Of a stretch of DNA of 64,000 nucleotides, positions 20,460 through 41,315 are shown piece after piece. The stretch covers positions 10,354,001-10,418,000 of the forward strand of contig NC_091289.1 in assembly GCF_032444005.1 (NCBI RefSeq), written 5' to 3'. The first letter of the stretch is position 1. The number at the start of each line of letters is the position of its first letter. Below the pieces are notes generated by a model that did no database searches, was not told the origin of the DNA, and saw nothing but the letters and a program-made list of their open reading frames with translations. Position numbers and translations under genes: made by a program. This stretch comes from Ranitomeya imitator. Taxonomy: Eukaryota.

Positions 20460-21917
20460 TCTGCAGGGAGCTCCCCCTAGTGGTGACTGCAGACAGGATC
20501 TTATCATGTATCTCTGTATACAGGGAGCTCCCCCTAGTGGTGACTGCAGACAGGATCTTATCATATATCTCTGTATACAGGGAGCTCCCCCTAGTGGTGA
20601 CTGCAGACAGGATCTTATCATGTATCTCTGTATACAGGGAGCTCCCCCTAGTGGTGACTTATGTGACAGGATGTTATGTATCTATATACACGGAGCTCCC
20701 CCTAGTGGTGCCTGCAGACAGGATCTTATCATATATCTCTGTATACAGGGAGCTCCCCCTAGTGGTGACTGCAGACAGGATCTTATCATGTATCTCTGTA
20801 TACAGGGAGCTCCCCCTAGTGGTGACTGCAGACAGGATCTTATCATGTATCTCTGTATACAGGGAGCTCCCCCTAGTGGTGACTTATGTGACAGGATGTT
20901 ATGTATCTCTATATACACGGAGCTCCCCCTAGTGGTGCCTGCAGACAGGATCTTATCATGTATCTCTGTATACAGGGAGCTCCCCCTAGTGGTGACTGCA
21001 GACAGGATCTTATCATATATCTCTGTATACAGGGAGCTCCCCCTAGTGGTGACTGCAGACAGGATCTTATCATGTATCTCTGTATACAGGGAGCTCCCCC
21101 TAGTGGTGACTTATGTGACAGGATGTTATGTATCTCTATATACAGGGAGCTCCCCCTAGTGGTGACATGACAGGATGTTATCATGTATCTCTATATACAG
21201 GGAGCTCCCCCTAGTGGTGGCTGCAGACAGGATCTTATCATGTATCTCCCTATACATGGAGCTCCCCCTAAAGGTGGCTGCAGACAGGATCTTATGTATC
21301 TCTGTATACAGGGAGCTCCCCCTAGTGGTGGATGCAGACAGGATCCTATCATGTATCTCTGTTCACAAGGAGCTCCCCCTAGTGGTGACTGCAGACAGGA
21401 TCTTATCATGTATCTCTGTATACAGGGAGCTCCCCCTAGTGGTGGCTGCAGACAGGATCTTATCATGTATCTCTGTATACAGGGAGCTCCCCCTAGTGGT
21501 GACTGCAGACAGGATCTTATCATGTATCTCTGTATACAGGGAGCTCCCCCTAGTGGTGACTGCAGACAGGATCTTATGTATCTCTGTATACAGGGAGCTC
21601 CCCCTAGTGGAGGCTGCAGACAGAATCTTATCATGTGTCTCTGTATACAGGGAGCTCCCCCTAGTGGTGACTGCAGACAGGGTCTTATCATGTATCTCTG
21701 TATACAGGGAGCTCCCCCTAGTGGTGGCTGCAGACAGGATCTTATCATGTATCTCTGTATACAGGGAGCTCCCCCTAGTGGTGACTGCAGACAGGATCTT
21801 ATCATGTATCTCTGTATACAGGGAGCTCCCCCTAGTGGTGGCTTCAGACACGATCTTATCATGTATCTCTGTACACAAGGAGCTCCCCCTAGTGGTAGCT
21901 GCCGACAGGATGTGATG
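20460..21917. repeat. 57-bp minisatellite, left block (~25 units), CTCF-like motif on minus strand
   Basis: Unit cagggagctccccctagtggtgactgcagacaggatcttatcatgtatctctgtata. Confidence 0.96.
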
Positions 21918-21919
21918 TA

Positions 21920-23537
21920 CAGTACAGACCAAAAGTTTGGACACACCTAATTTAAAGATTTTTCTGTATTTTCATGACTATGAAAATTGTACATTCACAC
22001 TGAAGGCATCAAAACTATGAATTAACATATATGGAATTATATACTTAACAAAAAAGTGTGAAACAACTGAAATTATGTCTTATATTCTAGGTTCTTCAAA
22101 GTAGCCACTTTTTGCTTTGATGACTGCTTTGCACACTCTTGGCATTCTCTTGATGAGCTTCAGGAGGTAGTCACCGGGAATGGTCTTCCAACAATCTTGA
22201 AGGAGTTCCCAGAGATGCTTAGCACTTGTTGGCCCTTTTGCCTTCACTCTGCGGTCCAGCTCACCCCAAACCATCTCGATTGGGTTCAGGTCTGGTGACT
22301 GTGGGGGGCCAGGTCATCTGGGCGTAGCATCCCATCACTCTCCTTCTTGGTCAAATAGCCCTTACACAGCCTGGAGGTGTGTTTGGGGTCATTGTTCTGT
22401 TGAAAAATAAATGATGGTCCAACTAAACGCAAACCGGATGGAATAGCATGCCGCTGCAAAATGCTGTGGTAGCCATGCTGGTTCAGTATGTCTTCAATTT
22501 TTAATAAATCCCCAACAGTGTCACCAGCAAAGCCCCCCCACACCATCACACCTCCTCCTCCATGCTTCACGGTGGGAACCAGGCATGTAGAGTCCATCCG
22601 TTCACCTTTTCTGCATCGCACAAAGACACGGTGGTTGGAACCAAAGATCTCAAATTTGGACTCATCAGACCAAAGCACAGATTTCCACTGGTCTAATGTC
22701 CATTCCTTGTGTTCTTTAGCCCAAACAAGTCTCTTCTGCTTGTTGCCCGTCCTTAGCAGTGGTTTCCTAGCAGCTATTTTACCATGAAGGCTGCTGCACA
22801 AAGTCTCCTCTTAACAGTTGTTGTAGAGATGTGTCTGCTGCTAGAACTCTGTGTGGCATAGACCTGGTCTCTAATCTGAGCTGCTGTTAACCTGCGATTT
22901 CTGAGGCTGGTGACTCGGATAAACTTATCCTCAGAAGCAGAGGTGACTCTTGGTCTTCCTTTCCTGGGGCAATCCTCATGTGAGCCAGTTTCTTTGTAGC
23001 GCTTGATGGTTTTTGCTACTGCACTTGGGGACACTTTCAAAGTTTTCCCAATTTTCCAGACTGACTGACCTTAATTTCTTAAAGTAATGATGGCCACTCA
23101 TTTTTCTTTACTTAGCTGTTGTTTTCTTGCCATAATACAAATTCTAAATTTCTAATATTCAGTAGGACTATCAGCTGTGTATCCACCAGACTTCTGCACA
23201 ACACAACTGATGGTCCCAACCCCATTTATAGGGCAAGAAATCCCACTTATTAAACCTGACAGGGCACACCTGTGAAGTGAAAACCATTTCTGGTGACTAT
23301 CTCTTGAAGCTCATGAAGAGAATGCCAAGAGTGGGCAAAGCAGTCATCAAAGCAAAAGGAAGAACCTAGAATATAAAACATTTTCAGTTTTTTCACACTT
23401 TTTTGTTAAGTATATAATTCCACATGTGTTAATTCATAGTTTTGATGCCTTCAGTGTGAATTTACAATTTTCATAGTCATGAAAATACAGAAAAATCTTT
23501 AAATGAGAAGGTGTGTCCAAACTTTTGGTCTGTACTG
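21920..23537 (-). mobile_element. Tc1-like transposon (1618 bp), transposase pseudogene, inserted in the 57-bp array
   Basis: TA TSD; ~260-bp TIRs starting cagtacagaccaaaagtttggacacacc; frameshifted fragments with WSDESKF, QQNNDPKH (D to N) and VWGELDRRV. Confidence 0.95.
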
Positions 23538-25100
23538 TATCTCTGTATACAGAGAGCTCCCCCTAGTGGTGGCTGCAGACAGGATCTTATCATGTATCTC
23601 TGTATACAGGGAGCTCCCCCTAGTGGTGACTGCAGACAGGATCTTATCATGTATCTCTGTATACAGGGAGCTCCCCCTAGTGGTGGCTGCAGACAAGATC
23701 TTATGCATCTCTGTATACAGGGAGCTCCCCCTAGTGGTGACTGCAGACAGGATCTTATCATGTATCTCTGTATACAGGGAGCTCCCCCTAGTGGTGGCTG
23801 CAGACAGGATCTTATCATGCATCTCTGTGTACAGGGAGCTCCCCCTAGTGGTGGCTGCAGACAGGATCTTATCATGTATCTCTGTATACAGGGAGCTCCC
23901 CCTAGTGGTGGCTGCAGACAAGATCTTATCATGCATCTCTGTATACAGGGAGCTCCCCCTAGTGGTGTCTGCAGACAAGATCTTATCATGTATCTCTGTA
24001 TACAGGGAGCTCCCCCTAGTGGTGTCTGCAGACAGGATCTTATCATGTATCTCTGTATACAGGGAGCTCCCCCTAGTGGTGACTGCAGACAGGATCTTAT
24101 GTATCTCTGTATACAGGGAGCGCCCCCCTAGTGGTGTATGCAGACAGGATCTTATCATGTATCTCTGTATACAGGGAGCTCCCCCTAGTGGTGGCTGCAG
24201 ACAGGATCTTATCATGTATCTCTGTATACAGGGAGCCCCCCCCTAGTGGTGACTGCAGACAGGATCTTATCATGTATCTCTTTATACAGGGAGCTCCCCC
24301 TAGTGGTGACTGCAGACAGGATCTTATCATGTATCTCTGTATACAGGGAGCTCCCCCTAGTGTCTGCAGACAAGATCTTATCATGTATCTCTGTATACAG
24401 GGAGCTCCCCCTAGTGGTGTCTGCAGACAGGATCTTATCATGTATCTCTGTATACAGGGAGCTCCCCCTAGTGGTGTCTGCAGACAAGATCTTATCATGT
24501 ATCTCTGTATACAGGGAGCTCCCCCTAGTGGTGGCTGCAGACAGGATCTTATCACGTATCTCTGTATACAGGGAGCTCCCCCTAGTGGTGTCTGCAGACA
24601 GGATCTTATCATGTATCTCTGTATACAGGGAGCTCCCCCTAGTGGTGGCTGCAGACAGGATCTTATCATGTATCTCTGTATACAGGGAGCTCCCCCTAGT
24701 GGTGGCTGCAGACAGGATCTTATCATGTATCTCTGTATACAGGGAGCTCCCCCTAGTGGTGGCTGCAGACAGGATCTTATCATGTATCTCTGTATACAGG
24801 GAGCTCCCCCTAGTGGTGGCTGCAGACAGGATCTTATCACGTATCTCTGTATACAGGGAGCTCCCCCTAGTGGTGTCTGCAGACAGGATCTTATCATGTA
24901 TCTCTGTATACAGGGAGCTCCCCCTAGTGGTGGCTGCAGACAGGATCTTATCATGTATCTCTGTATACAGGGAGCTCCCCCTAGTGGTGGCTGCAGACAG
25001 GATCTAGTCATGTATCTGTATAAAGAGAGCTCCCCTAGTTGTGGCTGTATAGAATATTATCATGCCTCTTTTTATACAAGGAGCTCCCCCTAGTGGTGGA
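23538..25100. repeat. 57-bp minisatellite, right block (~27 units), CTCF-like motif on minus strand
   Basis: Same unit resumes in register after the TA duplication. Confidence 0.96.
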
Positions 25101-25155
25101 TGCAGGATTCCAGATTTTATAATTTTCATTGCTGTTTCTAATATTTTGATGCTAC

Positions 25156-25326
25156 CTGGGTTAAGGATGGGGCACGTGCAGCCACGATTGGTCCATGATT
25201 CTGGATAGATGCTCCGGTTTTTCCGACCAATTTTCACTTTCCCTGATTTGAGGACTTTTCTCACTTTCACCACCACTTCTGCATGAGTGCCTTTATCATG
25301 TGCCGACAAAATTCTTGCTTTTATGA
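25156..25326 (-). CDS. Netrin-4-like exon 9 (NTR domain)
   Basis: 171 nt, VIKARILSAHDKGTHAEVVVKVRKVLKSGKVKIGRKNRSIYPESWTNRGCTCPILNP; AG/GT flanks, phase 1-1. Confidence 0.95.
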
Positions 25327-25737
25327 CTGCCAAAGAAAACAAAAAAAAAAAAAAAAAGATATAAATGCTTTCAAAGTTACATGGTGTTTTCTTCTCTACT
25401 CACATCCAAAGCTGCATTCAGAATTCTGCTGGTTACCGAAGAGTAGTGCATTGTGGGAGATCAGGCGACAGATACACAGCTAGGCCTCCGCTGTTAGGTC
25501 AGACGCTTCATTGTGTAGTGAAGAAATGTCATCTTGCAGGATTGTGAATGCAGCTTTGGGTGTGAATGGAGTATAAGACAATAATGAGATGTTGAGAACG
25601 TTTTCATATTCCTGGTGAATTAAATATGGCATTTCAATGTTCTCGGGTCAGAAATGTTGACGATTTATCAAGTACAAGATGGTATTTTACCATCGTTAAG
25701 ATCTGGAGGGCGCGGTGACATCCGATCTCCCACTTAC

Positions 25738-25806
25738 CGTACGCATATTTCATCTGGCAGAAATCCGTCATGCTCCCCAGCATCCGCTCCTTGCACACAC
25801 ACTTCT
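25738..25806 (-). CDS. Netrin-4-like exon 8
   Basis: 69 nt, EKCVCKERMLGSMTDFCQMKYAY; cf. NTN4 GKCECKEQTLGNAKAFCGMKYSY; G|gtaagt donor. Confidence 0.92.
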
Positions 25807-26220
25807 CTGGAGGACGCACGTCACGTGCCAGGTACATGAAAAAAAGAATTCAAGACGTCGGCCACTCGGTTATCAGGGCCAATCTGTGACCTGGCAGGTG
25901 TGAGGGACTACAAGTAACAGCATGGCTGGCAGCAGTGCTGGGTCCAGCGGTTTACAACATCTATAGTATGGTATAAATAGTGCCGCCACTTTCCATCATC
26001 TTTTAAAGTGACAGTACAGCTTTGAAGATCTATGCTTTTTTATTGAAGCATAGGACATATCACTGCAGAACTAGACACACGTTGCAATGATGGACAGTTG
26101 GGTGACAGGTTACATGTGGACACTACACTCATACCCGGTTATTTAACTGTGAGTTTTCCCTTTAAGAGAAGATCTTTTGTAACTTGGAGCCTCAGACTGT
26201 TACTTTTCATTGGCGGCTAC

Positions 26221-26354
26221 CTGGATGTCGCAGCGCGGAAAAGCCCTGTTCACTCGTCCACTTCCAGTCATCTTCACTGTCATTGGTCGGCAGGTCTATG
26301 ATGTCAGGAATCCGTCCACCAATAGGAATGTTTAAATAATGTTCATTGTCACTG
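26221..26354 (-). CDS. Netrin-4-like exon 7 (linker)
   Basis: 134 nt, SDNEHYLNIPIGGRIPDIIDLPTNDSEDDWKWTSEQGFSALRHP; cf. NTN4 WEWEDAQGFSALLHS; phases 2/1 fit neighbours; not in ORF track. Confidence 0.88.
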
Positions 26355-26434
26355 CTGCAAAACGATCGGTGACATCATCAGCGGAATCGGCAATATTGTT
26401 ATATTGTCAAATTATACAAAAAACAACAAGATAC

Positions 26435-26648
26435 CTGTTGCGACATTCCCCCGTGTCTGGGTCACAGTCTCTCGCACAGTCACATGGGCGGCAGCCATTG
26501 TCTCCAAATCCCCAGTATCCCGTCAAGCAGTGATCGCAGTATGGACCGGCCACACCGGGTTTGCAGTAACAGAAACCAGTTTTGGGGTTACACTTCCAAC
26601 TTTTGTTCAGCGTTTCATTTACAGAGCCGATAACATTACAGGGACATT
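26435..26648 (-). CDS. Netrin-4-like exon 6 (LE3)
   Basis: 214 nt, CPCNVIGS...[43 protein letters not shown]. Confidence 0.95.
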
Positions 26649-26689
26649 CTATAATAAAGATGATGAGAGCTATAGTACATATTGCTACA

Positions 26690-28530
26690 AAACAGAGCAG
26701 TATTATAGTAGTTATATTCTTGTACATAGGGGCAGTATTATAGTAGTTATATTCTTGTACATAGGGGCAGTATTATAGTAGTTACATTCTTGTACATAGG
26801 AGCAGTATTATAGTAGTTATATTCTTGTACATAGGGGCAGTATTATAGTAGTTATATTCTTGTACATAGGGGCAGTATTATAGTAGTTATATTCTTGTAC
26901 ATAGGGGCAGTATTATAGTAGTTATATTCTTGTACATAGGAGCAGTATTATAGTAGTTATATTCTTGTACATAGGGGCAGTATTATAGTAGTTATATTCT
27001 TGTACATAGGGGCAGTATTATAGTAGTTATATTCTTGTACATAGGGGCAGTATTATAGTAGTTATATTCTTGTACATAGGGGCAGTATTATAGTAGTTAT
27101 ATTCTTGTACATAGGGGCAGTATTATAGTAGTTATATTCTTGTACATAGGGGCAGTATTATAGTAGTTATATTCTTGTACATAGGGGCAGTATTATAGTA
27201 GTTATATTCTTGTACATAGAGGCAGTATTATAGTAGTTATATTCCTGTATATAGGGGGCAGTATTATAGTAGTTATATTCCTGTATATAGGAGCAGTATT
27301 ATAGTAGTTATATTCTTGTACATAGGAGCAGTATTATAGGAGTTATATTCTTGTACATAGGAGCAGTATTATAGCAGTTATATTCTTGTACATAGGAGCA
27401 GTATTATAGCAGTTATATTCTTGTACATAGGGGCAGTATTATAGTAGTTATATTCTTGTACATAGGAGCAGTATTATAGTAGTTATATTCTTGTACATAG
27501 TAGCAGTATTATAGTAGTTATATTCCTGTATATAGGGGGCAGTATTATAGTAGTTATATTCCTGTATATAGGAGCAGTATTATAGTAGTTATATTCTTGT
27601 ACATAGGAGCAGTATTATAGGAGTTATATTCTTGTACATAGGAGCAGTATTATAGCAGTTATATTCTTGTACATAGGGGCAGTATTATAGTAGTTATATT
27701 CTTGTACATAGGAGCAGTATTATAGTAGTTATATTCTTGTACATAGTAGCAGTATTATAGTAGTTATATTCCTGTATATAGGGGGCAGTATTATAGTAGT
27801 TATATTCCTGTATATAGGAGCAGTATTATAGTAGTTATATTCTTGTACATAGGAGCAGTATTATAGGAGTTATATTCTTGTACATAGGAGCAGTATTATA
27901 GCAGTTATATTCTTGTACATAGGGGCAGTATTATAGTAGTTATATTCTTGTACATAGTAGCAGTATTATAGTAGTTATATTCCTGTATATAGGGGGCAGT
28001 ATTATAGTAGTTATATTCCTGTATATAGGAGCAGTATTATAGTAGTTATATTCTTGTACATAGGAGCAGTATTATAGGAGTTATATTCTTGTACATAGGA
28101 GCAGTATTATAGCAGTTATATTCTTGTACATAGGGGCAGTATTATAGTAGTTATATTCTTGTACATAGGAGCAGTATTATAGTAGTTATATTCTTGTACA
28201 TAGTAGCAGTATTATAGTAGTTATATTCCTGTATATAGGGGGCAGTATTATAGTAGTTATATTCCTGTATATAGGAGCAGTATTATAGTAGTTATATTCT
28301 TGTACATAGGAGCAGTATTATAGGAGTTATATTCTTGTACATAGGAGCAGTATTATAGCAGTTATATTCTTGTACATAGGGGCAGTATTATAGTAGTTAT
28401 ATTCTTGTACATAGGAGCAGTATTATAGTAGTTATATTCTTGTACATAGTAGCAGTATTATAGTAGTTATATTCCTGTATATAGGAGCAGTATTATAGTA
28501 GTTATATTCCTGTATATAGGAGCGCTATTA
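26690..28530. repeat. 35-bp AT-rich minisatellite (~52 units)
   Basis: Unit ggcagtattatagtagttatattcttgtacatagg. Confidence 0.96.
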
Positions 28531-29132
28531 CAGTAATTATATAATTTTACAACAGGTTGCATTCCACTGCACAATAACTACAGGGGAGCTAGATTTTAAG
28601 CTGCGTCCCTTTAACTGAACCCTGGCATCAGGTTGGTTGAGCAGAATTCCGCTATTTAAATAGAACGGGCTTCTCCTCGCCCGCTCACAGCTGTGCTTTG
28701 CACACCGGATTATGGGACTAGAAAAAAAAAAGAGCCAAGATATAATTGAATGAGCACTGCTAATGCCCCAGATGTATCACAGAAGGAGACAGAGGCTTAA
28801 CCGAACAATGGACCGGCATTACGGCCCCCGTGAAGAGTAATGCCCGGCTCTCAGTGAAAATCCCAGCTCCAAATGAATCATATCACACTATATCAAAACC
28901 CAGGAATCCGGTGTTATGTTGTAGCTGAAGGGCAGGTGTGTGTCGGGCGGACGGCCGCCTTTTATCCCCCTTTCTTTTGTGTCTGATACGCTGGGTACAT
29001 GGCATCTAAATTGGCAGTTTTGTGCATTTTTATGGACTATTTTCTTTCTTTTTTTTAAAAAAAAGCCCAAGATGTTGAGACAAGTTGCTTAGTAATGCAT
29101 GAAGGCGCACGTTCATCAAGCTTGTGTCTTAA

Positions 29133-29779
29133 AGGGAACCTGTCACCCCAAAAATCGCGGGTGAGGTAAGCCCACCGGCATCAGGGGCTTATCTGCAGCA
29201 TTCTGTAATTCTGTAGATAAGCCCCCGATGTTACCTGAAAAAGGATAAAAAGACGTTATATTATACTCACCCAGGGGCGGTCCCACGGCTGGTCCGGTCG
29301 GATGGGGGTCTCTGGTCCGCTGTGGCGCCTCCTATCTTCTTTCCATGACGTCCTCTTCTGATCTTCAGCCACGGCTCCGGCGCAGGCGTACTTTGCTCTG
29401 CCCTGTTGAGGGCAGACAAAGTACTGCAGTGCGCAGGCGCCGGAAAGGTCAGAGGCCCGGCGCCTGCGCACTGCAGTACTTTGTCTGCCCTCAACAGGGC
29501 AGAGCAAAGTACGCCTGCGCCGGAGCCGTGGCTGAAGATCAGAAGAGGACGTCTTGTAATGAAGATGGGAGGCGCTGCAGCGGACCGGAGACCCCCATCC
29601 GACCGGTTCAGCAGCGGGACCGCCCCTGGGTGAGTATAATATAACGTCTTTTTCTCCTTTTTCAGGTAACATCGGGGGCTTATCTACAGCATTCCAGAAT
29701 GCATTACAGAATGCTGTAGATAAGCCCCTGATGCCGGTGGGCTTACCTCACCCGCGATTTTCGGGGTGACAGGTTCCCT
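29133..29779. mobile_element. T2/Kolobok-type fold-back MITE (647 bp)
   Basis: TTAA TSD; same agggaacctgtcaccc termini as 19032-19842 but different interior; palindromic arms. Confidence 0.9.
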
Positions 29780-29929
29780 TTAAAGGGGCTGTCTGCAATA
29801 AATACCTCCGTGTCTCATCATACCTAGTGAAGGTTGTCCCCCCTCTAGAGACAAGGGGGGAGGTAACAACATGGACGCCTCTGAGTTTAGGTGTATGATA
29901 AGTAGCCCCGTCTCTTCTTCTGGACTTAC

Positions 29930-30118
29930 CTTTGCACACCAGGGGGGAGCTGATGGGCTCAGTGGGGTCCCGGTAATATCCCGCCCTGCATCTCTGGCAG
30001 CGGTGCCCTTCAGTGTTGTGCTGACAGTTTTCACAAACTCCTCCGCTTTTCTTTCCAGAGGACACCCAGATGCCAGGATCGAAGTGACAGCTGACGGCGT
30101 GATTGTGACAACGACAAC
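29930..30118 (-). CDS. Netrin-4-like exon 5 (LE2)
   Basis: 189 nt, CRCHNHAVSCHFDPGIWVSSGKKSGGVCENCQHNTEGHRCQRCRAGYYRDPTEPISSPLVCK; G|gtaagt donor. Confidence 0.95.
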
Positions 30119-30236
30119 CTATACGTGGAGACGGTAGAGGAAGGCGAGATATTACCGGAGACCATAGCGACAACCAAGACATGAAAGCTCCTCTGTAGCC
30201 ATCAATCTGTCCATCCATCCATCTCATATCCATCTA

Positions 30237-30414
30237 CAGGTGCTTCTCACATTAGATCATCATCAAAAAGTTAATTTATTTCAGTTCTTCAATACAAAAA
30301 GTGAAACCCATATATTTTATAGAGCCATTACACACAGAGTGATCTATTTCACGTGTTTATTTCTGTTAATGTTGATGATTATGGCTTACAGCCAATGAAA
30401 ACTCAAAAGTCTTT
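30237..30414. mobile_element. Isolated Tc1 TIR fragment, same family as 41476-44008
   Basis: ta|caggtgcttctcaca...tcatcaaaaagttaatttatttcagttcttcaatacaaaaagtgaaac nearly identical to 41476 onward. Confidence 0.8.
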
Positions 30415-30468
30415 ATCTTGTTTGCTTTTGCTGCTGCTGCTTGACATTGAGTGCTGCTGCTCAGCTTA

Positions 30469-30779
30469 GGCTACGTTCAGACTAGCGTTGTGCTAGTGTG
30501 CGTCGGGTTAGCGTCGGGCGACGCACGAGTCATGCGCCCCTATGTTTAACATGGGGGACGCATGCGTTTTTGTTTGTTGCGTTTTGCGACGCATGCGTCT
30601 TTTTTGCCGCAAGCGTCGGACCAAGAAAACGCAACAAGTTGTATTTTTCTTGCGTCCGATTTTCGGCAAAAAACGACGCACGCGTCGCAAAACGCAGCGT
30701 TTTTGCGTGCGTTTTGCCGCGTTTTTGCGTGCGTTGTGTCGCCGACGCAGCGGCGCACAACGATAGTCTGAACGTAGCC
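30469..30779. mobile_element. PIF/Harbinger-type MITE
   Basis: TIR ggctacgttcagacta / tagtctgaacgtagcc with TTA on both sides. Confidence 0.8.
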
Positions 30780-31032: not shown

Positions 31033-31159
31033 GTTTGCACTCGTTGGGGGCTCCGGTTTTCCCATCTCCAGGCCTCCATGGGACATCATTGTACATTGGG
31101 GCGCACTTTTCACAGTGATCCCCTGCGGTGTTATGTTGGCACACACATTTCCCATGGAC
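31033..31159 (-). CDS. Netrin-4-like exon 4 (LE1)
   Basis: 127 nt, [42 protein letters not shown]; AG/GT flanks; frame not shown in ORF track. Confidence 0.94.
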
Positions 31160-31946
31160 CTGAAGAGATAAAATACAAGTTACTCTTCATTGTATTCATC
31201 ACATGAGCTGTGTATCTAATCTGATCATGCGGGATAGTGTCTGCAGCGTTTAGCCCCAACATGAGAAGCGTTCAGCACTACAACCCCCATCATCACATGT
31301 TACATTGCATGTAATGTGGCAATGACTCGGTGCCGGTCGTCCTCTGATGATGGAGATCTGGCGGCTATGGGCGCACAGAATCTGGGTCAGGCCTTAATAT
31401 GATCGTCCCCAACCCCTCATTGTTCCTTTGTATCACATTATTCTGTTGTTTGTAATCTGGGGGGCACAGCGGCTCCATGTGCAGAGGCAGCGCCCCCCGG
31501 CTGGCCTGCTCGGCAGCTCATGTCACTGTCCCGGATGGTTTTTGGCACAGGACCCAGGCAGACTTTTTTTCTCCTCCATCCAGCTGGTCTTTGAATTGCC
31601 GACCCAGCAGCAGAGCTGCACCGTGCCTGGAGGTCACCAAGCCTGGCACGGCCTAGATCAGATAGTTTGGAAACCGCTGGGGATTATCAGGGTGAAGGCA
31701 CAAGATGTTTGGACAGGAGATAACTACTGGAAACGGAGGAGGGTTATAGAAGGAATGTGCTAAATCCACTAAGAAATGTCTGTGCGCAAAAACAAGAGTC
31801 ACCTCGGGTGACCTGGAGCCACCAGCCTGGAGCTGCTGCTGGACGTGACCCCCTGCAGGGAACCAAGAGGAAAAGAGACAGCGAGGGCATCTGCAGAAAA
31901 TCAGGAGGGGCTCTGCAGGATCAGGGTGCAAATATATCAGAGGATG

Positions 31947-33313
31947 CTGGTCACCAAGGACTGGAACCCGAAACAGCTGGTCACCAAAGAATGGGACACC
32001 AAACAGCTGATCGCCAGGAACTGGGACACCAAACAGCTAGTCACGAGGGACTGGGACACCAAACAGCTGGTCACCAAGGACTGGAACACAAAACAGCTGA
32101 TCGCCAAGAACTGGGACACCAAACAGCTGGTCACCAGGAACTGGAACACCAAACAGCTGGTCACGAGGGACTGGGACACCAAACAGCTGGTCACGAGGGA
32201 CTGGGACACCAAACAGCTGGTCACGAGGGACTGGGACACCAAACAGCTGGTCACCAGGAACTGGAATACCAAACAGCTGGTCACGAGGGACTGGGACACC
32301 AAACAGCTGATCGCCAGGAACCGGGACACCAAACAGCTGATCGCCAGGAACTGGAACACCAAACAGCTGGTCACGAGGGACTGGGACACCAAACAGCTGG
32401 TCACGAGGGACTGGGACACCAAACAGCTGATCGCCAGGAACTGGGACACCAAACAGCTGATCGCCAGGAACTGGGACATCAAACAGCTGGTCACCAGGAA
32501 CTGGGACACCAAACAGCTGGTCATGAGGGACTGGGACACCAAACAGCTGGTCACGAGGGACTGGGACACCAAACAGCTGGTCACGAGGGACTGGGACACC
32601 AAACAGCTGGTCACGAGGGACTGGGACACCAAACAGCTGGTCACCAGGGACTGGGACACCAAACAGCTGGTCACAAGGAACTGGGACACCAAACAGCTGG
32701 TCACCAGGGACTGGGACACCAAACAGCTGATCGCCAGGAACTGGGACACCAAACAGCTGGTCACGAGGAACTGGGACACCAAACAGCTGATCGCCAGGAA
32801 CTGGGACACCAAACAGCTGATCGCCAGGAACTGGGACACCAAACAGCTGGTCACCAGGAACACCAAACAGCTGGTCACGAGGGACTGGGACACCAAACAG
32901 CTGGTTACGAGGGACTGGGACACCAAACAGCTGGTCACCAGGGACTGGGACACCAAACAGCTGGTCACGAGGGACTGGGACACCAAACAGCTGGTCACCA
33001 GGGACTGGGACACCAAACAGCTGGTCACCAGGGACTGGGACACCAAACAGCTGGTCACCAGGGACTGGGACACCAAACAGCTGGTCACCAGGGACTGGGA
33101 CACCAAACAGCTGGTCACCAAAGAATGGGACACCAAACAGCTGGTCACGAGGGACTGGGACAGCAAACAGCTGGTCACCAGGAACTGGGACACCAAACAG
33201 CTGATCGCCAGGAACTGGGACACCAAACTACTGGTCACCAAGGACTCGGACACCAAACAGCTGGCCACCAGGGACTGGGACACCAAAAAGCTGATCGCCA
33301 GGTACTGGGTCAG
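31947..33313 (+). repeat. 30-bp tandem repeat (~45 units), stop-free in several frames
   Basis: Unit ctgggacaccaaacagctggtcacgaggga; one 21-bp unit near 32860. Confidence 0.95.
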
Positions 33314-34828
33314 TAAACCGCCAGAGTTACCCCAGTGTTTCATACAAGACTTCACACCAGGTTATGTCAGAATGGTCCATTGTAATATATTACTTTGCCC
33401 CAACACCTGGTCCGTATCCTTCCTTACATTGAGAGCCACATTCAGTGGCCCCCATTAAGTCCCCCATTAGTGACACTGAGAACCTGGTATAAGACGTCCT
33501 TAAAGGCAGGATTCTCACATCCACTTTACCACAGTCCGTGTCCTTACGACCAGCAGACTTGCCACACTATTGTACCCAGCTTTGAGCACCCCTATAACTG
33601 GTAGTGTCAGTATACCCCCCACCCCATGTAGGACCATCCAGACATGGTTGTTATACTTGGTGCTAATGCACCAAACTGGCAGACAGCCGTGAATACACAC
33701 CATGGGCCTGCGAGCCTCAGGTTGGGGACCCCCTGCCCTAATACAATTAGCAGGAGACTATTCCTGCAGCGTCAGATCATATACCCCATAAAGAGCAAGT
33801 CGCTCGCAGTTGGAGCTGCCAGTGTCTGTGCATTAACATTTTGCTGAACCCGGGATTGCGGGGGCTATGGTTAGGGCTGGGTCACATCCCTGTTGGAGCG
33901 CTGCCAGTTGAGAGATATGCATGGGGTGGGGTGAGGGGTTAGTAGATCCGGCCACCCCTTCACAGTGGAGGTCAGGTTGTGCCAGCATCCCCCCAGGGCC
34001 TCATGTAGTGGCAGACACAGACAGAAGGGGCTCCTGTGCAAGAGCAGTATATGGGCCCTGTGCAGTCCAATATCTCATAATGCACAATTCCACCTGCTTT
34101 GGAGCCTGATGTGGCCCCCGACCTCCTGGACCCCTGTGCGGCTGCACCAATTATATTTCCGCCCGTGGCTTCATGCTCACTGTGTAATGACACCGGATAG
34201 TGGTCCCACCAACATTATGGACGTCTAAAATTTTGAGCACATTTTAGCACAACGTGTAACTTTCAACATGAAAAATAGGAAAAAAAAGATTGAAGACAAA
34301 AATAAAGAGAATTTTTGATTTGGCGCAATATTTGTGAGCTATGCGCACCAGTTTGATAGCTTTGGAGGAAAAAAAAAAATCAATATCAACGAAAACCACA
34401 AGATAAAAAAAAAAGTTACTTAAAGTAAAAATTGCAAAAGATGAACCAATCCCTTTGTATTGCAAGCCTTCTCTGAGCGCTGATTGCTGTCATTGAATGG
34501 ACCGTTCAGCCCGGATAGTCCTATGTGAGCGAAATGCTTGACACGAATCTTTCCTATGCTCTGATCAATTATAGCAAACTATCAGCGCAGGTAAAATGTA
34601 ATCTGGAGTCTACACGAAATACATTGCAGCAAAGCCACAGCTATAAGTAGTGCTAGATCAGGATGGGTTTTAGCCTCTTCATGTACAAAAATGTAATGAT
34701 TTATGTTAAGAAAGCAGAGGTCTTGTAAATGGGGTTAAATGGGGACACAAAATACATCTACAGCCGTACACATCACTATTCGGTCTGATTCGGTACAATG
34801 TATCGGTGCAGGGAGAATATATCATCTT

Positions 34829-35607
34829 CGGCTGTGTGCACACGGTGCGTTTTTGCTGCGTTTTTTAAATGCAGATTTGTCACAAAACCTGAAGGGTTTC
34901 CTGACGCAGCACAGTGAATGGGAATCCTGAAGTCTCGTGCACACGGCGCTTATTTTTAACTTGCAGACTTAACACTATATGCAGTGTTAACTCTGTGCCT
35001 ATGTTCACATGTTGCGTTTTTTATGTGTTTTTTTTCCAGAGGCAAAATCTGCTCTCTTGGCAGTAAGAAACTTGCCTTTAAAAAAAAAAGCAGGTTTTGC
35101 TCAGTTTTTGTTGCACTTTTTTCCTGCGATTTTGCCATGGTACATTTGTCCCTTGTGCATGCCGATAAATTTTAATGCATAAAAAAAAAAAAGTTTGATT
35201 CTACCTCATTAGGTTTTGACACCAAAAGAAAAAAACTTCTTTCAATGGGTGAAAACCACTAAAAGAAGCGACATGCTGCATTGCTGCATTTGTCACAAAG
35301 CAAGGTATTGCACAAATACTGAGTACAAAAAACAAGCTGTGTTCATGAGATGTCTGAAATTTCATAGACTTTGCTAGTACTGGAAAACGCAGCTGAAATT
35401 GTGCATAAAAAACATATTTAAAAAATGCAACATGTGAGCAGCCTTTTTGCTGCAGATTGCACCCATACTAATGAGTGGGGAAGAATCTGCACCAAAAATG
35501 CAAGTAAGAAATGGAAAAAAAAAAAAATGGCTTTTTGCTGCTATATTTTTCCTGCCAAGCGATGCAGAAATTTCTGCACCAAATATTTCAACGTGTGCAC
35601 ATAGCCT
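34829..35607. mobile_element. Degenerate Harbinger-like MITE remnants
   Basis: ggctgtgtgcacacgg / gcctatgttcacatgttgcg ... caacgtgtgcacatagcc termini; boundaries approximate. Confidence 0.5.
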
Positions 35608-36075
35608 AAAGTCACGTGCACACACTGAGCATTTGGTGAGTTTTTGCATCAGTATTTGTAAGCCAAAGCCAAGAGATCAAAAGACAGAGAAAAATTTAAT
35701 TCACAAAAAATTCTCTAGATTGGATCCCTTGTAGCAAAGTATTAGGTCAGGATGATTTTTCTGCCTCTGGATCTAAACAAGAACATTCCGGTCACTGACA
35801 TCTAGCAGAGGTCTTAAAAATGAGGAAAATTGTATGCACAAGAATAATAAAAACACCATAATAATAAAAAGACACCAAAGACAGTTTAAAAACTAAATAA
35901 ATAAAAAGAGACCAGTAAAGCAGAAGTACACGGACTAATGTGTATGTGCTCTTCCGGCTCTGCAGAAAGCAGGATGACAATCCCTATGGGCCATGTGACG
36001 TCTGACAACTATGAAAGCCAAGCAGCACCTGTGACATTGATAGGACTAAGATGTCTGCTCTGCCCCTTTACTCAC

Positions 36076-36342
36076 AGCAGCCTCTGCTCCCGCCATGCTC
36101 CCCGCCTGCTCACACGCCTCCGCATGTCCATTGCAGAAACAGCTTCCACGTACGATCAGATCATAAATGGCGTAGTAAGCGAATCTCTGGGGCTTCTCCT
36201 GTAATCCGCGCACAGCCTGGCATGGACAGTCCTGTCTCTTTAAGAGCAGAAGTCTCAGGTTAGTGATCTTCAGCAGCTCCTGTGCCTGAGGACTGTACGG
36301 ATCCTCAATTCTATTAGCCGGATTTAAGGCTCGAAATATCAC
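36076..36342 (-). CDS. Netrin-4-like exon 3 (end of LN domain, start of LE1)
   Basis: 267 nt, VIFRALNPANRIEDPYSPQAQELLKITNLR...YYAIYDLIVRGSCFCNGHAEACEQAGSMAGAEAA; GCT|gtgagt donor. Confidence 0.95.
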
Positions 36343-36641
36343 CTGGAAGCAAGAGGGGGTGCAAACACAACGTTACAATAACTACAGTGCAGTAAGTCTT
36401 CATACAGGAAAATATATATCACTGCACCGTGTTAGCGCCTAGATAGAAAAATATTAAGATTTGAGAGTCCTCAGTGGTTAATACCTTTTTTTTTAATGGC
36501 TAACTGAACAGGAACAAATTGCAGCTCAGTGCAGGAATGAACGTGTCACATGGATTTATGTCTTTCTACATGAACCATGGAGTGTGCTCCTCAGACCATG
36601 AGGGGTCATCACAACCCTGGACCAGACCCCAATCACAGGAC

Positions 36642-36919
36642 AATAATAATAATCTTTATTTTTATATAGCGCTAACATATTCCGCAGCGCTTTACAGGTT
36701 GCACACATTATCATCGCTGTCCCCGATGGGGCTCACAATCTAGATTCCCTATCAGTATGTCTTTGGAATGTGGGAGGAAACCGGAGAACCCGGAGAAAAC
36801 CCACGCAAACACGGAGAGAACATACAAACTCTTTGCAGATGTCGTCCTTGGTGGGGTTTGAACCCAGGACACCAGCGCTGCAAGGCTGCTGTGCTAACCA
36901 CTAAGCCACCGTGCTGCCC
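36642..36919 (-). mobile_element. tRNA-derived V-SINE
   Basis: Minus strand: A box TGGCTTAGTGG, B box GGTTCAAACC, V-domain-like gagtttgtatgttctctccgtgtttgcgtgggtttt, (ATT)n tail. Confidence 0.85.
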
Positions 36920-38449
36920 CAATAAAACTTCCACACTCCTTATCTATGAACTGTTCCAATATTCACGGCCACAACTGTTTCTCCCTCTCCCTCTGATCGT
37001 TCGGCTTCCCGTCACTCGTCTTATCTATTGCATTATTCCTGTGTCCCGTTGTGTATAAATATGGGATTCTTAACATTTTCTGTTATCCTGAGCCCGATGA
37101 ACGGACTTGAGGAGTCTCCAAAGCTGCAATTTGTTACCGTCTTTTCAGTTAGCCAATAAAAAGAGGTGTATCGCAATATTGTAGTAAATGTTCAGGACTC
37201 ATGCTCCAGTCACATCCAGAGCTGCAGTCCCAGTTCTGCTTTATGTTGTATCTTGCAGAATGCCGTCCTGTAATCTCACAGCTGTTCACTGTTCAGCTCT
37301 TTGCTGGATTGCATTGATGTCATGTCTGTAGTGTATTATAGGAGCCAGATGAGGTGACATCCGCCATGTGGCATCCTGAAGAATTATGAATGCAGCTCTT
37401 GGGCTAGATTCACACGTTGTGGCCAAGATGCGTATTTTGCCTCAACATGACAAAAATAAACTGTTTTTTTCCTGCAATTTTCAGCAAAAATATTGTGGTG
37501 AGAAAACTGCCCTGCAGCCGCAACGTGAGAGCACGGCCTTAATGAGACTTTCTTAAAAACCAGACTAAGGCAGTGCCATATATTGTGTAATTACAGGAAC
37601 TCGGCTTAGGCAGTGATCTCTGCTTGCTGGCATTCAGCAGAATTTTGAATGCAGCTCTGGATGTGAGTGCAGACATCCTCCAGCGGAAAGGCAGTGCTAT
37701 CTATTATGTACCCGGGATAATAAGAATAATTGTGGCTTATTCATGGCAGCACATCGCACGGGCACTGGCGCTCTGTTGTGACTGCACACGTAGCGTGATC
37801 TGCGTCACAGTATTCATGCCCGGTCAACTGTCATGAACATTTCTAATAACCGCCCTCATCCCCAGCAGCGAGAGTCCGATGTCCCAGCCCCCCACTGTTT
37901 AGGAGATGCTCACCCCGCTGGGCCACAAAAATGCTCTATTCTATTGCAGCAGTCGGGAAGAAATGGAATTTCAGCTCCGCTGACACAAGTGTGTCTACCC
38001 CTCTACTGACGGGCCGTGCCTGGGACCCCCGTGGTTCTGTTATGAGGCAGGGGCTCCTCTATGCAATTAACCCTTTGTTTAATGAGAAGTTCCTTTATAG
38101 AGTCAAAAAGGTTAAAATTGCTCAAATAGCAATGGGCTGAATGTAACTTAAACATATTAACACTAATTACCATAAATATTGGCACAAGCTATGAGCCCCC
38201 TATTACAGGTGCTGCCATCCTGCATTCATACCATTGCCCAACATAACAGAAGCATAAGACCTCACCACTGGGTATATTTCATTTTGATCATTTTAAAATG
38301 ACCCAAGCGTTAGGGTTTATTAACTTTATAACATATTTATTACTGATGAAACTTGATTTTACCGTTACACAGTTCAAAATCCCTTCCATAAACCAAGGCG
38401 AATAACACAATTCAAGCCACCAATACAAGATATATATATATACACTGCA

Positions 38450-39720
38450 GCCACCACTAGGGGGCGCTCCCTGTATACAGAGATACATGATAAGATCCTG
38501 TCTGCAGCCACCACTAGGGGAGCTCCCTGTATACAGAGATACATGATAAGGTTCTGTCTGCTGCCACCACTAGGGGGAGCTCCCTGTATACAGAGATACA
38601 TGATAAGATCCTGTCTGCAGTCACCACTAGGGGGAGCTCCCTGTATACAGAGATACATGATAAGAACCTGTCTGCAGTCACCACTAGGGGGAGCTCCCTG
38701 TATAGAGAGATACATGATAAGATCCTGTCTGCAGTCACCACTAGGGGGAGCTCCCTGTATACTGAGATACATGGTAAGATCCTGTCTGCAGTCACCACTA
38801 GGGGGAGCTCCCTGTATACAGAGATGCATGATAAGATCCTGTCTGCAGTCACCACTAGGGGAGCTCCCTGTATACAGAGATACATGATAAGAACCTGTCT
38901 GCAGTCACCACTAGGGGGAGCTCCCTGTATACAGAGATACATGATAAGGTTCTGTCTGCTGCCACCACTAGAGGGGCTCTCTGTATACAGAGATACATGA
39001 TAAGATCCTGTCTGCAGCCACCACTAGGGGGAGGTCCCTGTATACAGAGATACATGATAAGATTCTGTCTGCAGCCACCACTAGGGGGAGCTCCCTGTAT
39101 ACAGAGATACATGATAAGATCCTGTCTGCAGCCACCACTAGGGGGAGGTCCCTGTATACAGAGATACATGATAAGATTCTGTCTGCAGCCACCACTAGGG
39201 GGAGCTCCCTGTATACAGAGATACATGATAAGATCCTGTCTGCAGCCACCACTAGGGGGAGCTCCCTGTATACAGAGATACATGATAAGATCCTGTCTGC
39301 AGTCACCACTAGGGGGAGCTCCCGGTATACAAAGATACATGATAAAATCCTGTCTGCAGCCACCACTAGGGGGAGCTCCCTGTATACAGAGATACATGAT
39401 AAGATCCTGTCTGCAGTCACCACTAGGGGGAGCTCCCTGTATACAGAGATACATGATAAGGTTCTGTCTGCTGCCACCACTAGCGTGAGCTCCCTGCATA
39501 CAGAGATACATGATAAGATCCTGTCTGCAGTCACCACTAGGGGGAGCTCCCTGTATATAGAGATACATGATAAGATCCTGTCTGCAGCCACCACTAGGGG
39601 GAGCTCCCTGTATACAGAGATACATGATAAGATCCTGTCTGCAGCCATCACTTGGGGGAGCTCCCTGTATACAGAGATACATGATAAGATCCTGTCTGCA
39701 GTCACCACTAGGGGGAGCTC
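38450..39720. repeat. 57-bp minisatellite, inverted orientation (~22 units), CTCF-like motif on plus strand
   Basis: Unit ccactagggggagctccctgtatacagagatacatgataagatcctgtctgcagtca, reverse complement of the 20-25 kb arrays. Confidence 0.96.
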
Positions 39721-40525
39721 TGTTATGACCTGGTGGTCAGGACAATAATGGACCTAGTGGTTAAGAGCACACGGAATGACCTGATAGTTACTGATAATAA
39801 GGACGAGCTCTGGGACGTGGGAACTCTGCTGACCGCAATCCCTAATCCTATCAAACACACTAGAAATAGCCGTGGATTGCGCCTAACGCTCCCTATGCAA
39901 CTCGTCACAGCCTAAGGAACTAGCTAGCCCTGAGGATAGAAAAATAAAGCCTACCTTGCCTCAGAGAAATTCCCCAAAGGAAAAGGCAGCCCCCCACATA
40001 TAATGACTGTGAGTAAAGATGAAAATACAAACACAGAGATGAAATAGATTTAGCAAAGTGAGACCTGACTTACTGAACAGACCGAGGATAGGAAAGGTTA
40101 CTTTGCGGTCAACACAAAAACCTACAAAAAGACCACGCAGAGGGCGCAAAAAGACCCTCCGCACCGACTCGCGGTGCGGAGGCGCTCCCTCTGCGTCCCA
40201 GAGCTTCCAGCAAGCAAGACACAATAAAAATAGCAAGCTGGACAGAAAAATAGCAAACCAAAGAAATACAAGCTGGAACTTAGCTTCTGCTAGGAAGACA
40301 GGTCACAAGAACGATCCAGGAGTGAACTAGACCAATACTGGAACATTGACAGGTGGCATGGAGCAAAGATCTAAGTGGAGTTAAATAGAGCAGCCAGCTA
40401 ACGAATTAACCTCGTCACCTGAGGAAGGAAACTCAGAAACACCCACCAGAGGAAGTCCATGGACAGAACCAGCCGAAGTACCATTCATGACCACAGGAGG
40501 GAGCCCGACAACAGAATTCACAACA
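39721..40525. mobile_element. Solo LTR (805 bp) inserted in the 57-bp array
   Basis: TGTT...AACA termini, GAGCTC duplicated on both sides, no coding remnant. Confidence 0.85.
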
Positions 40526-41315
40526 GAGCTCCCTGTATACAGAGATACATGATAAGATCCTGTCTGCAGCCACCACTAGGGGATCTCCCTGTATACAAAG
40601 ATACATGATAAGATCCTGTCTGCAGTCACCACTAGGGGAATCTCCCTGTATACAGAGATACATGATAAGGTTCTGTCTGCAGTCACCACTAGGGGGAGCT
40701 CCCTGTACACAGAGATACATGATAAGATCCTGTCTGCAGCCACCACTAGGGGGAGCTCACTGTATACAGAGATACATGATAAGATCCTGTCTGCAGTCAC
40801 CACTAGGGGAGCTCCCTGTATACAGAGATACATGATAAGATCCTGTCTGCAGTCACCACTAGGGGGAGCTCCCTGTATACAGAGATACATGATAAGATCC
40901 TGTCTGCAGTCACCACTAGGGGAGCTCCCTGTATACAGAGATACATGATAAGATCCTGTCTGCAGTCACCACTAGGGGGAGCTCCCTGTATACAGAGATA
41001 CATGATAAGATCCTGTCTGCAGTCACCACTAGGGGGAGCTCCCTGTATACAGAGATACATGATAAGATCTTGTCTGCATCCACCACTAGGGGGAGCTCCC
41101 TGTATACAGAGATACATGATAAGGTTCTGTCTGCAGCCACCACTAGGGGGAGCTCCCTGTATACAGAGATACATGGTAAGGTTCTGTCTGCAGCCACCAC
41201 TAGGGGGAGCTCCATATATACAGAGATACATGATAAGGTTCTGTCTGCAGTCACCACTAGGGGGAGCTCCATATATACAGAGATACATGATAAGATCCTG
41301 TCTGCAGTCACCACT
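40526..41315. repeat. 57-bp minisatellite continuation (~14 units)
   Basis: Array resumes in register after the LTR. Confidence 0.95.

What the first reader, a model, noticed from the sequence alone, without database searches (positions are those of the whole stretch)
20460..41315. About 88 tandem CTCF-like sites in divergently oriented 57-bp arrays inside the netrin gene
Seen: nearly every 57-bp unit carries CCACTAGGGGGAGCT. This fits the CTCF core CCASYAGRKGGCRSY at all but one position (A for C), and some units (e.g. ~38454-38468) have the full-consensus GGGGGCGC. Unit variation seems to fall mostly outside the motif. Blocks at 20.5-25.1 kb (~52 units) point left; blocks at 38.5-41.3 kb (~36 units) point right. 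Known: CTCF blocks loop extrusion in an orientation-dependent way, and divergent sites typify domain boundaries. Inference: a minisatellite family may act as expandable, oriented insulator cassettes, here separating TMEM43/CHCHD4 from the netrin promoter and UROC1.
Basis: partly seen in the sequence, partly recalled or inferred. Interest (0 to 1): 0.78.

Follow-up and report, generated by a model that had tools for sequence, protein, structure and literature searches.

The report
Transposon-arm minisatellites carrying CTCF-type motifs
Two introns of a poison frog's netrin-4-like gene hold about 87 tandem copies of a 57-base unit that matches the CTCF binding motif well, but each array grew from one arm of an old hairpin-shaped transposon that already carried the motif, and nothing yet shows that they work as insulators.

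Summary
Two 57-bp minisatellite arrays, 20445-25105 (motif on the minus strand) and 38445-41315 (motif on the plus strand), contain 87 near-full units. About 75-79 of them match the CTCF matrix strongly (about 20 of 27 bits, p about 1e-7). Both arrays lie in introns of a netrin-4-like gene (introns 9 and 2), between CHCHD4/TMEM43 and the netrin promoter/UROC1.

The insulator reading is possible but unsupported.
- **Origin:** Each array is one amplified arm of an old hairpin repeat. Rhinoderma darwinii has the unamplified element in the same intron, with one CTCF-type motif per arm. Orthologous loci in Xenopus, Rhinoderma and Engystomops have no 57-bp array.
- **Conservation argument fails its control:** The homologous 86-bp sister satellite has no CTCF motif, yet the same segment is its least variable part.
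- **Orientation:** "Divergent" only reflects which arm was amplified in each element, a one-in-four outcome.
- **Context:** Tandem repeats fill 31% of the window.

A single CTCF motif about 0.5 kb upstream of the netrin start codon is conserved in four frogs. It is the better boundary candidate.

The scan has already noted a 57-bp CTCF-motif array of about 80 units elsewhere in this genome, plus several other CTCF-motif minisatellites. No binding or Hi-C data could be reached.

The parts
20445..21919 (-). 57-bp array A, left part (25 near-full units; 225-bp higher-order period); CTCF-type motif on the minus strand
21920..23537 (.). Tc1-like transposon inserted into array A (TA target duplication, inverted ends about 95% alike, transposase frame broken)
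23538..25105 (-). 57-bp array A, right part (27 near-full units). Its two outermost units are degenerate (a true array edge) and lie 45 bp from the exon 9 splice donor
20340..20432 (+). Unamplified partner arm of the hairpin repeat next to array A; CTCF-type motif decayed (best -9.5 bits)
38355..38444 (+). Outer part of a hairpin-repeat arm directly upstream of array B
38445..39720 (+). 57-bp array B, left part (22 near-full units); the first unit has the full-consensus GGGGGCGCT
39721..40526 (.). 806-bp TG..CA LTR-like insertion splitting array B, with GAGCTC on both sides
40527..41315 (+). 57-bp array B, right part (13 near-full units)
44290..44420 (-). Solitary arm copy with a CTCF-type motif (18.2 bits at 44323). 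It is probably the partner arm of array B, separated from it by a Tc1-like element at 41474-44010
17927..51573 (-). Netrin-4-like gene, 10 coding exons: about 51573-51466, 46179-45643, 36345-36073, 31159-31031, about 30116-29931, 26649-26437, 26356-26222, 25819-25739, 25327-25151, 18061-17927
52112..52130 (-). Single CTCF-type motif (22.3 bits) about 0.54 kb upstream of the netrin start codon; conserved in four frog species
1..9381 (+). 86-bp satellite (108 units), a homologue of the 57-bp unit without a CTCF motif; used as a control
49504..50798 (+). Older 86-bp array in netrin intron 1, orthologous to the 97-bp (Rhinoderma) and 100-bp (Engystomops) arrays

Best explanation
The two arrays are ordinary minisatellites that grew in place from the inner arm of an old hairpin-shaped (inverted-repeat, MITE-like) dispersed repeat of hyloid frogs. 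I take this to be lineage-specific and neutral. The arm already carried a CTCF-type motif. Unequal crossing-over or replication slippage in very repeat-prone, chromosome-end-proximal DNA copied a 57-bp piece of one arm about 52 times in netrin intron 9 and about 35 times in intron 2. In one element the right arm was amplified and in the other the left arm, so the arrays point apart. The motif is therefore inherited rather than maintained unit by unit, and the arrays need no insulator function to explain their existence. Shown: the arrays, the motif strength, the intron positions, the homology to the hairpin arms and to the 86-bp family, and absence of the arrays in three other frogs. Inferred: the expansion mechanism and neutrality. 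CTCF could well bind naked units, because the motif is strong and has no CpG to be methylated. Whether it binds in chromatin is unknown.
For: Origin: Rhinoderma darwinii has a hairpin element of about 240 bp (L002 28996-29236) in the same last intron, in the same order after exon 9. Its outer arms are 19/19 complementary and its inner arms are 46 nt at 83%. It has one CTCF-type motif per arm (+29078 at 19.8 bits, -29150 at 18.6 bits). Window 20340-20423 aligns to that arm (E 4e-4). The edge of array A, the upstream flank of array B and the solitary copy at 44.3 kb also align to it. Engystomops has an arm homologue in intron 2 (E 1e-7). Lineage specificity: there is no 57-bp array in L001, L002 or L003. 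The R. variabilis gene is at least 8.9 kb shorter than the span in this window. Repeat-prone context: tandem repeats make up 31% of the window. The orthologous loci lie 7-21 Mb from chromosome ends. This is the zone where frog minisatellites derived from transposon pieces expand by unequal crossing-over (PMC10794172). No selection signal: the 86-bp sister family is homologous over its full length (z 9.3), has no CTCF match and expands just as well (108 units). Its segment homologous to the motif is the least variable. The unamplified arm has lost its motif. G-run slippage that breaks the motif has spread to 7-9 units. Age: both arrays pre-date transposon insertions.
Against: The PWM match is very strong and the units are CpG-free (observed/expected 0.00-0.05), so CTCF binding is chemically plausible. 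The motif block is the least variable part of the unit. Both Rhinoderma arms keep motifs of about 19 bits. Earlier notes of this scan list at least 9 CTCF-motif minisatellites in this genome, which looks like more than chance and could mean a real link between CTCF sites and arrays (unchecked). No chromatin data were available either way.
Confidence: 0.68

Rival explanations
1. The arrays are occupied by CTCF in vivo and act as strong, orientation-specific barriers to cohesin loop extrusion, exapted or incidental. Array A (motifs pointing left) would anchor loops to the CHCHD4/TMEM43 side, for example with the plus-strand site at 12756. Array B (motifs pointing right) would anchor loops to the netrin promoter side, for example with the conserved minus-strand site at 52112. 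The 13 kb between them would then be a boundary.
For: PWM of about 20 bits in 75-79 units. The units are CpG-free, so DNA methylation cannot block the sites (methylation sensitivity of CTCF is established knowledge). Convergent partner sites exist on both sides. Precedents: the DXPas34 34-bp minisatellite has a CTCF site per monomer (PMC3149622). Dxz4 banks of co-oriented CTCF motifs direct contacts by their orientation (PMC5899087). Tandem CTCF sites act as insulators (PMC7087399). Transposons spread CTCF sites in mammals (PMC3368268). CTCF and Rad21 are needed for domains in Xenopus (PMC8270788).
Against: No occupancy or contact data exist. The conservation argument fails its control. The arrays are absent in three other frogs, and the partner arm's motif has decayed. 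Repeats and transposons are often heterochromatic, and such marks mask CTCF motifs (PMC12487818, title and abstract only). A 57-bp spacing leaves no room for nucleosomes between bound sites, so full occupancy would need a nucleosome-free stretch of 3-5 kb (inference). A deeply conserved single site already sits at the promoter.
Confidence: 0.22
2. The main consequence is at the RNA or DNA-structure level. The two arrays are inverted repeats inside one transcription unit and flank exons 3-9. In the pre-mRNA they could pair over hundreds of bases. That could promote back-splicing (a circular RNA of exons 3-9) or exon skipping, or make an ADAR substrate. At the DNA level they could mediate inversion of the 13-kb segment.
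For: Inverted arms reach 676-685 nt at 94-95% complementarity, 13.9 kb apart. Both lie in introns of the same gene. Promotion of exon circularisation by flanking inverted intronic repeats is established knowledge for Alu pairs.
Against: The gene looks intact and its exons are conserved. Each array can also pair within itself only as direct repeats, so competition is not an issue, but 13 kb is a long span.
Confidence: 0.08
3. The two arrays are the ends of one large mobile element, or the product of a single inversion that split one array.
For: The arrays are inverted and 94-96% alike.
Against: Conserved netrin exons 3-9 lie between them, in the same order as in Xenopus. Each array has its own hairpin-arm flank and a degenerate true start in the same phase (column 1). 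The ends fall at columns 14 and about 42, which a single breakpoint cannot give. Each array also has private variants.
Confidence: 0.02

Closest known systems
Frog minisatellites grown from pieces of transposons near chromosome ends (Bredeson et al. 2024, PMC10794172)
   Same: These are head-to-tail arrays of tens of bp, derived from part of a dispersed repeat. They sit among many other arrays and lie 7-21 Mb from a chromosome end in the three relatives where the position is known. Different expansions occur in different frog lineages.
   Different: The source here is the arm of a hairpin (inverted-repeat) element, not the SINE/tRNA-V, CR1 or Kolobok pieces named for Xenopus. The amplified piece happens to hold a CTCF-type motif.
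DXPas34 minisatellite at mouse Tsix (34-bp monomers, each with a CTCF site; PMC3149622)
   Same: It is a short-period tandem array with one CTCF motif per unit.
   Different: DXPas34 is CpG-rich, has experimentally shown CTCF binding and acts in X-inactivation choice. The frog arrays are CpG-free and their binding is untested.
DXZ4/Dxz4 and FIRRE macrosatellites (PMC3491370, PMC5899087, PMC6985041)
   Same: These are banks of co-oriented CTCF motifs in tandem repeats whose orientation dictates contact direction. Human DXZ4 has two oppositely oriented sets.
   Different: Their units are 3-6 kb against 57 bp here. Binding and architectural function are demonstrated, and their position is conserved across mammals. 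None of these is shown here, and position is not conserved beyond the genus level as far as could be checked.
Transposon-borne CTCF sites (SINE B2 and others; PMC3368268)
   Same: A dispersed repeat family carries a strong CTCF-type motif and seeds new motif copies around the genome.
   Different: In mammals the spread is by retrotransposition of single copies, and many copies are shown to be bound. Here the multiplication is local tandem amplification of one arm, and binding is unknown.

Membership tests
Vertebrate CTCF binding site | Match to the core motif (JASPAR MA0139-type matrix / CCASYAGRKGGCRSY) | tested here: met
   The consensus unit scores 19.9-20.3 of a maximum 27.4 bits, p about 1e-7. 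In the arrays 76 sites reach p<1e-6 and 79 reach p<1e-5, against about 1.3 expected at p<1e-5 in the whole window. The IUPAC check gives 14/15.
Vertebrate CTCF binding site | Occupancy by CTCF in chromatin or binding in vitro | not testable with these tools
   No ChIP, CUT&RUN or EMSA data were available.
Vertebrate CTCF binding site | Motif more conserved than its surroundings | tested here: inconclusive
   Within units the motif is less variable: 1.8% against 5.0%, rank 2 of 57. The CTCF-less 86-bp homologue shows the same low variability in the corresponding segment, rank 1 of 86. The partner arm's motif has decayed. Both Rhinoderma arms keep theirs.
CTCF-bound architectural tandem repeat (DXZ4 / DXPas34 type) | One co-oriented motif per repeat unit | tested here: met
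   All 50 motifs of array A are on the minus strand and all 27 of array B are on the plus strand.
CTCF-bound architectural tandem repeat (DXZ4 / DXPas34 type) | Array kept at the orthologous place in related species | tested here: not met
   There is no 57-bp array in the orthologous introns of Xenopus tropicalis, Rhinoderma darwinii or Engystomops pustulosus. DNA of other dendrobatids could not be fetched.
CTCF-bound architectural tandem repeat (DXZ4 / DXPas34 type) | Measured effect on contacts or insulation | not testable with these tools
   No Hi-C or Micro-C access.
Transposon-derived frog minisatellite | Unit homologous to part of a dispersed repeat found as single copies elsewhere | tested here: met
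   The hairpin element in Rhinoderma intron 9, the arm in Engystomops intron 2, and the arm copies at window 20340-20432, 38355-38444 and 44290-44420.
Transposon-derived frog minisatellite | Signs of unequal-exchange dynamics: higher-order periods, private variants per array, degenerate edge units | tested here: met
   A 225-bp period in A1; private variants per sub-array and degenerate first units.
Transposon-derived frog minisatellite | Location in the recombination-rich terminal part of a chromosome | tested here: inconclusive
   The orthologous loci lie 21.0, 7.3 and 7.45 Mb from a chromosome end. For this genome, earlier notes only imply that the window lies within about 38 Mb of one end of a 206-Mb record.
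Domain boundary with divergent CTCF sites | Reverse motifs on the left and forward motifs on the right | tested here: met
   With two arrays this has a 1-in-4 chance, and it follows from which hairpin arm was amplified.

The most novel reading that the evidence does not exclude
A hairpin transposon family of hyloid frogs carries a working CTCF site in each arm. Local tandem amplification of an arm creates CpG-free, methylation-proof CTCF super-sites that stall cohesin in one direction. In giant poison-frog genomes such arrays (this 57-bp family at several loci, and other CTCF-motif minisatellites noted by the scan) would then mark or strengthen domain boundaries. Alternatively, CTCF-bound sites may themselves be preferred seeds of minisatellite birth.
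Probability: 0.1. Interest if true: 0.75.

Novelty: new member of a known kind. Interest (0 to 1): 0.35.

Why it matters
As it stands this is an ordinary repeat expansion, and the claim that it is an insulator cassette should not be carried forward without chromatin data. It is still a useful natural series. The same intronic element exists with two single convergent motifs (Rhinoderma), with one decayed arm plus about 52 copies of the other (this frog), and with a matched sister satellite that lacks the motif. That allows a clean test of whether stacking CTCF motifs at 57-bp spacing increases occupancy or barrier strength. It also allows a test of whether transposon-borne CTCF motifs shape chromatin in amphibians as SINEs do in mammals. 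The conserved promoter-proximal motif gives an internal positive control.

Tried and rejected
1. One large mobile element with repeat-array ends, or a single inversion splitting one array. Rejected: conserved netrin exons 3-9 lie between the arrays, and the phases at the array ends do not fit.
2. ORF 20116-20337 as the last netrin exon. Rejected: it has no Pfam or PDB match, and the true last exon is at 18061-17927.
3. Scans of metagenome contigs for the unit and for two motifs 57 bp apart gave 0 hits.
4. Rfam on the whole window gave no family.
There is no read-depth, RNA or cross-species k-mer evidence.
6. DNA of the closest relatives (Ranitomeya variabilis, Dendrobates tinctorius, Phyllobates terribilis, Anomaloglossus) and of Bufo bufo could not be fetched because the files were too large. 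Only gene spans were obtained.
7. The search of earlier findings by sequence was blank.
8. The resemblance of CTGCAGT in the unit to the CTCF upstream motif was considered and dropped. It sits 2 bp from the core instead of about 10. This is from memory and was not tested.
Exons were mapped one by one with public frog proteins.


Full report
**What is there**

Tandem Repeats Finder reports a 57-bp repeat at 20456-21911, 23536-25105, 38445-39720 and 40526-41315, at 90-95% matches. The 15-mer CCACTAGGGGGAGCT, allowing one mismatch, occurs 77 times in these blocks. Fifty copies are on the minus strand on the left and 27 are on the plus strand on the right. Shuffled sequence gives none.

Tiling with the consensus gives 87 near-full units, 52 left and 35 right, plus partial units. 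The left pair of blocks is one array split by a Tc1-like transposon (21920-23537). That element has a TA target duplication, ends about 95% alike and a broken transposase frame. The right pair is one array split by an 806-bp TG..CA LTR-like insert (39721-40526). So the arrays are older than these insertions. The window has no N.

**Motif strength**

I scored the window with the JASPAR MA0139.1 count matrix. The consensus unit reaches 19.9-20.3 of a possible 27.4 bits (p about 1e-7). In the arrays 76 sites pass p<1e-6 and 79 pass p<1e-5. About 1.3 sites at p<1e-5 are expected in the whole window.

The only departure from the IUPAC core is A for C at one position.
- Only one unit (38454-38468) has the full GGGGGCGCT.
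- Nine units fall below 7.9 bits, mostly because one G of the G5 run was lost.
- The arrays are almost CpG-free, with observed/expected 0.00-0.05 against 0.39 for the window.

**Gene context**

Pfam finds Laminin_N, laminin-EGF and NTR pieces on the minus strand, plus CHCH and urocanase exons elsewhere. A full scan of protein representatives returned a 643-aa Xenopus tropicalis netrin-4-like protein (P0001). Mapping it by tblastn, exon by exon, gives ten coding exons from about 51573 to 17927 on the minus strand.

Array B lies in intron 2. Array A lies in intron 9, the last intron, and starts 45 bp after the exon 9 splice donor. I did not build or search a joined spliced model.

The exons are identical to the Ranitomeya imitator protein P0270 in most segments, so the window is that species or a very close relative.

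**Where the unit comes from**

The gene order UROC1, netrin-4-like, CHCHD4, TMEM43 is kept in X. tropicalis (L001), Rhinoderma darwinii (L002) and Engystomops pustulosus (L003). None of these loci has a 57-bp array.

Rhinoderma has a hairpin element of about 240 bp (28996-29236) in the same last intron, shortly after exon 9:
- Its outer arms are 19/19 complementary.
- Its inner arms are 46 nt at 83%.
- Each arm carries one CTCF-type motif in convergent orientation: +29078 at 19.8 bits and -29150 at 18.6 bits.
- The 57-bp unit aligns to the inner arm at 80-88%.

In the window, 20340-20423 directly left of array A aligns to the Rhinoderma arm (E 4e-4). Its motif has decayed (best -9.5 bits). The right edge of array A continues into inner-arm sequence. 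The 90 bp upstream of array B match the outer arm. A solitary arm copy sits at 44290-44420, with an 18.2-bit motif. That copy is probably the partner arm of array B, now separated from it by a Tc1-like element at 41474-44010. Engystomops has an arm homologue in intron 2 (E 1e-7).

The simplest reading is that two old hairpin elements sat in introns 9 and 2. In this lineage one arm of each was amplified in place: the right arm in one element and the left arm in the other. That is why the arrays point apart, and for two arrays this outcome has a one-in-four chance.

**A matched control for the conservation argument**

The motif columns are the least variable part of the unit: 1.8% against 5.0%, with the 15-column window ranked second lowest of 57. 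By distinct variant types the difference is weak, 1.07 against 1.5 per column.

The 86-bp satellite at 1-9381 and 49504-50798 is a full-length homologue of the 57-bp unit (local alignment z 9.3 against shuffles). A 7-bp insertion and several substitutions remove the CTCF match (best -4.6 bits). Even so, the segment homologous to the motif is the least variable 24-column window of its 108 units: rank 1 of 86, at 0.5% against 3.7%.

Low variability there is thus a property of this repeat superfamily and not a sign of CTCF constraint. In both families the variable part is the AT-rich, slippage-prone stretch. The 86-bp family has also expanded at least as much without the motif. None of the other minisatellites in the window has the motif either.

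**Context and mechanism**

Tandem repeats make up 31% of the window. The orthologous loci lie 21.0, 7.3 and 7.45 Mb from a chromosome end. That places them inside the terminal zone where Bredeson et al. (PMC10794172) found frog minisatellites. Many of those derive from parts of transposons, and the authors attribute their expansion to unequal crossing-over in recombination-rich DNA.

Several arrays in this gene are old and orthologous across three hyloid families:
- the 86/97/100-bp array in intron 1;
- the 35/36-bp array just upstream of exon 6;
- the 28/30/31-bp array just after exon 2.

The 57-bp arrays are the younger, lineage-specific members of this landscape. The R. variabilis gene spans 24.75 kb against at least 33.6 kb here. 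That leaves room for differences in array size or presence between congeners, but I could not fetch its DNA.

**What speaks for function, and what is missing**

CTCF and Rad21 are needed for domains in Xenopus, and the vertebrate motif shows convergent orientation at domain borders there (PMC8270788). Tandem CTCF sites insulate (PMC7087399). Banks of co-oriented motifs in Dxz4 direct contacts by orientation (PMC5899087). DXPas34 is a 34-bp minisatellite with a CTCF site per monomer (PMC3149622). Transposons spread CTCF sites in mammals (PMC3368268).

So the idea is mechanistically reasonable. Array B would be convergent with the conserved promoter site at 52112, and array A with a plus-strand site at 12756. 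Repressive marks are also reported to mask potential CTCF sites (PMC12487818; I saw only the title and abstract).

By contrast, a single CTCF-type motif lies 0.44-0.67 kb upstream of the netrin start codon, on the gene's strand. It is conserved in all four frogs, including the distant Xenopus: window 52112 at 22.3 bits, L001 9464 at 25.5, L002 9316 at 19.3 and L003 9539 at 23.7. It is the better candidate for a real boundary element between UROC1 and netrin. It also shows that the matrix picks up conserved sites in frogs.

**Earlier notes of this scan**

Another window of this genome was noted to hold about 80 co-oriented CpG-free CTCF motifs in a 57-bp minisatellite (s1-294841). Several other CTCF-motif minisatellites were followed up and judged ordinary expansions, one of them from "a dispersed hairpin repeat" (s1-288135).

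I could not read those loci. My result agrees with them and adds the orthologous unamplified element and the sister-family control. If those arrays are as strong as this one, at least nine in 755 windows looks like more than chance. That leaves open a real link between CTCF-type motifs and array birth, most simply through this transposon family.

**Verdict**

The most likely explanation, at about 0.68, is neutral in-place amplification of hairpin-transposon arms that already carried the motif. A CTCF-barrier role, incidental or exapted, stays at about 0.2 and is directly testable.

Noticed in passing
window 52112-52130 (-); L001 9464, L002 9316, L003 9539: A single strong CTCF-type motif lies 0.44-0.67 kb upstream of the netrin-4-like start codon. 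A nearby TGGGCGGA box and, in the two-species alignment, an ATTTAATT box are conserved with it. It is present in Ranitomeya, Rhinoderma, Engystomops and Xenopus, and is a likely real promoter or boundary element between UROC1 and netrin.
   Followed up: yes
window 26695-28542; L002 25091-27116; L003 35591-39534: A 35/36-bp minisatellite of 53-110 copies sits directly upstream of netrin exon 6 in three hyloid families, with nearly identical consensus units. It appears to be an orthologous array that has persisted since these families split. The 28/30/31-bp array just after exon 2 and the 86/97/100-bp array in intron 1 behave the same way.
   Followed up: partly
window 24360-25044 versus 38972-39720: Arrays A and B are inverted repeats (up to 685 nt at 94-95%) flanking netrin exons 3-9 inside one transcription unit. 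They could pair in the pre-mRNA (back-splicing, editing) or mediate inversion of the 13-kb segment.
   Followed up: no
window 55840-57150 (+) and 41960-43290 (-): Two copies of an LTR-like repeat of about 1.2 kb each carry CTCF-type motifs (56014 at 21.1 bits; 43081 at 16.7 and 43171 at 14.4). The second copy is nested in a Tc1-like element at 41474-44010. This is a second transposon source of such motifs in this genome.
   Followed up: partly
window 1-9381 and 9354-9578 (-): The 9.4-kb 86-bp satellite abuts what reads like TMEM43 exon 1 on the minus strand. The exon identity rests on my recollection of the human N-terminus and on the TMEM43 gene called next to CHCHD4 in L002/L003. If so, the satellite fills the start of TMEM43 intron 1.
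   Followed up: partly
window 57372-58432 (+): Another Tc1/mariner-type transposase reading frame in two or three pieces, lying between the netrin promoter region and the mapped UROC1 exons (about 61-63 kb).
   Followed up: no
57-bp unit: The unit contains three short palindromes: CTGCAG, GGGAGCTCCC (which fits the loose NF-kB pattern GGGRNYYYCC) and TGTATACA. Because 57 is a multiple of 3, the arrays give long spurious ORFs, and the exon 9 frame runs on into array A.
   Followed up: no
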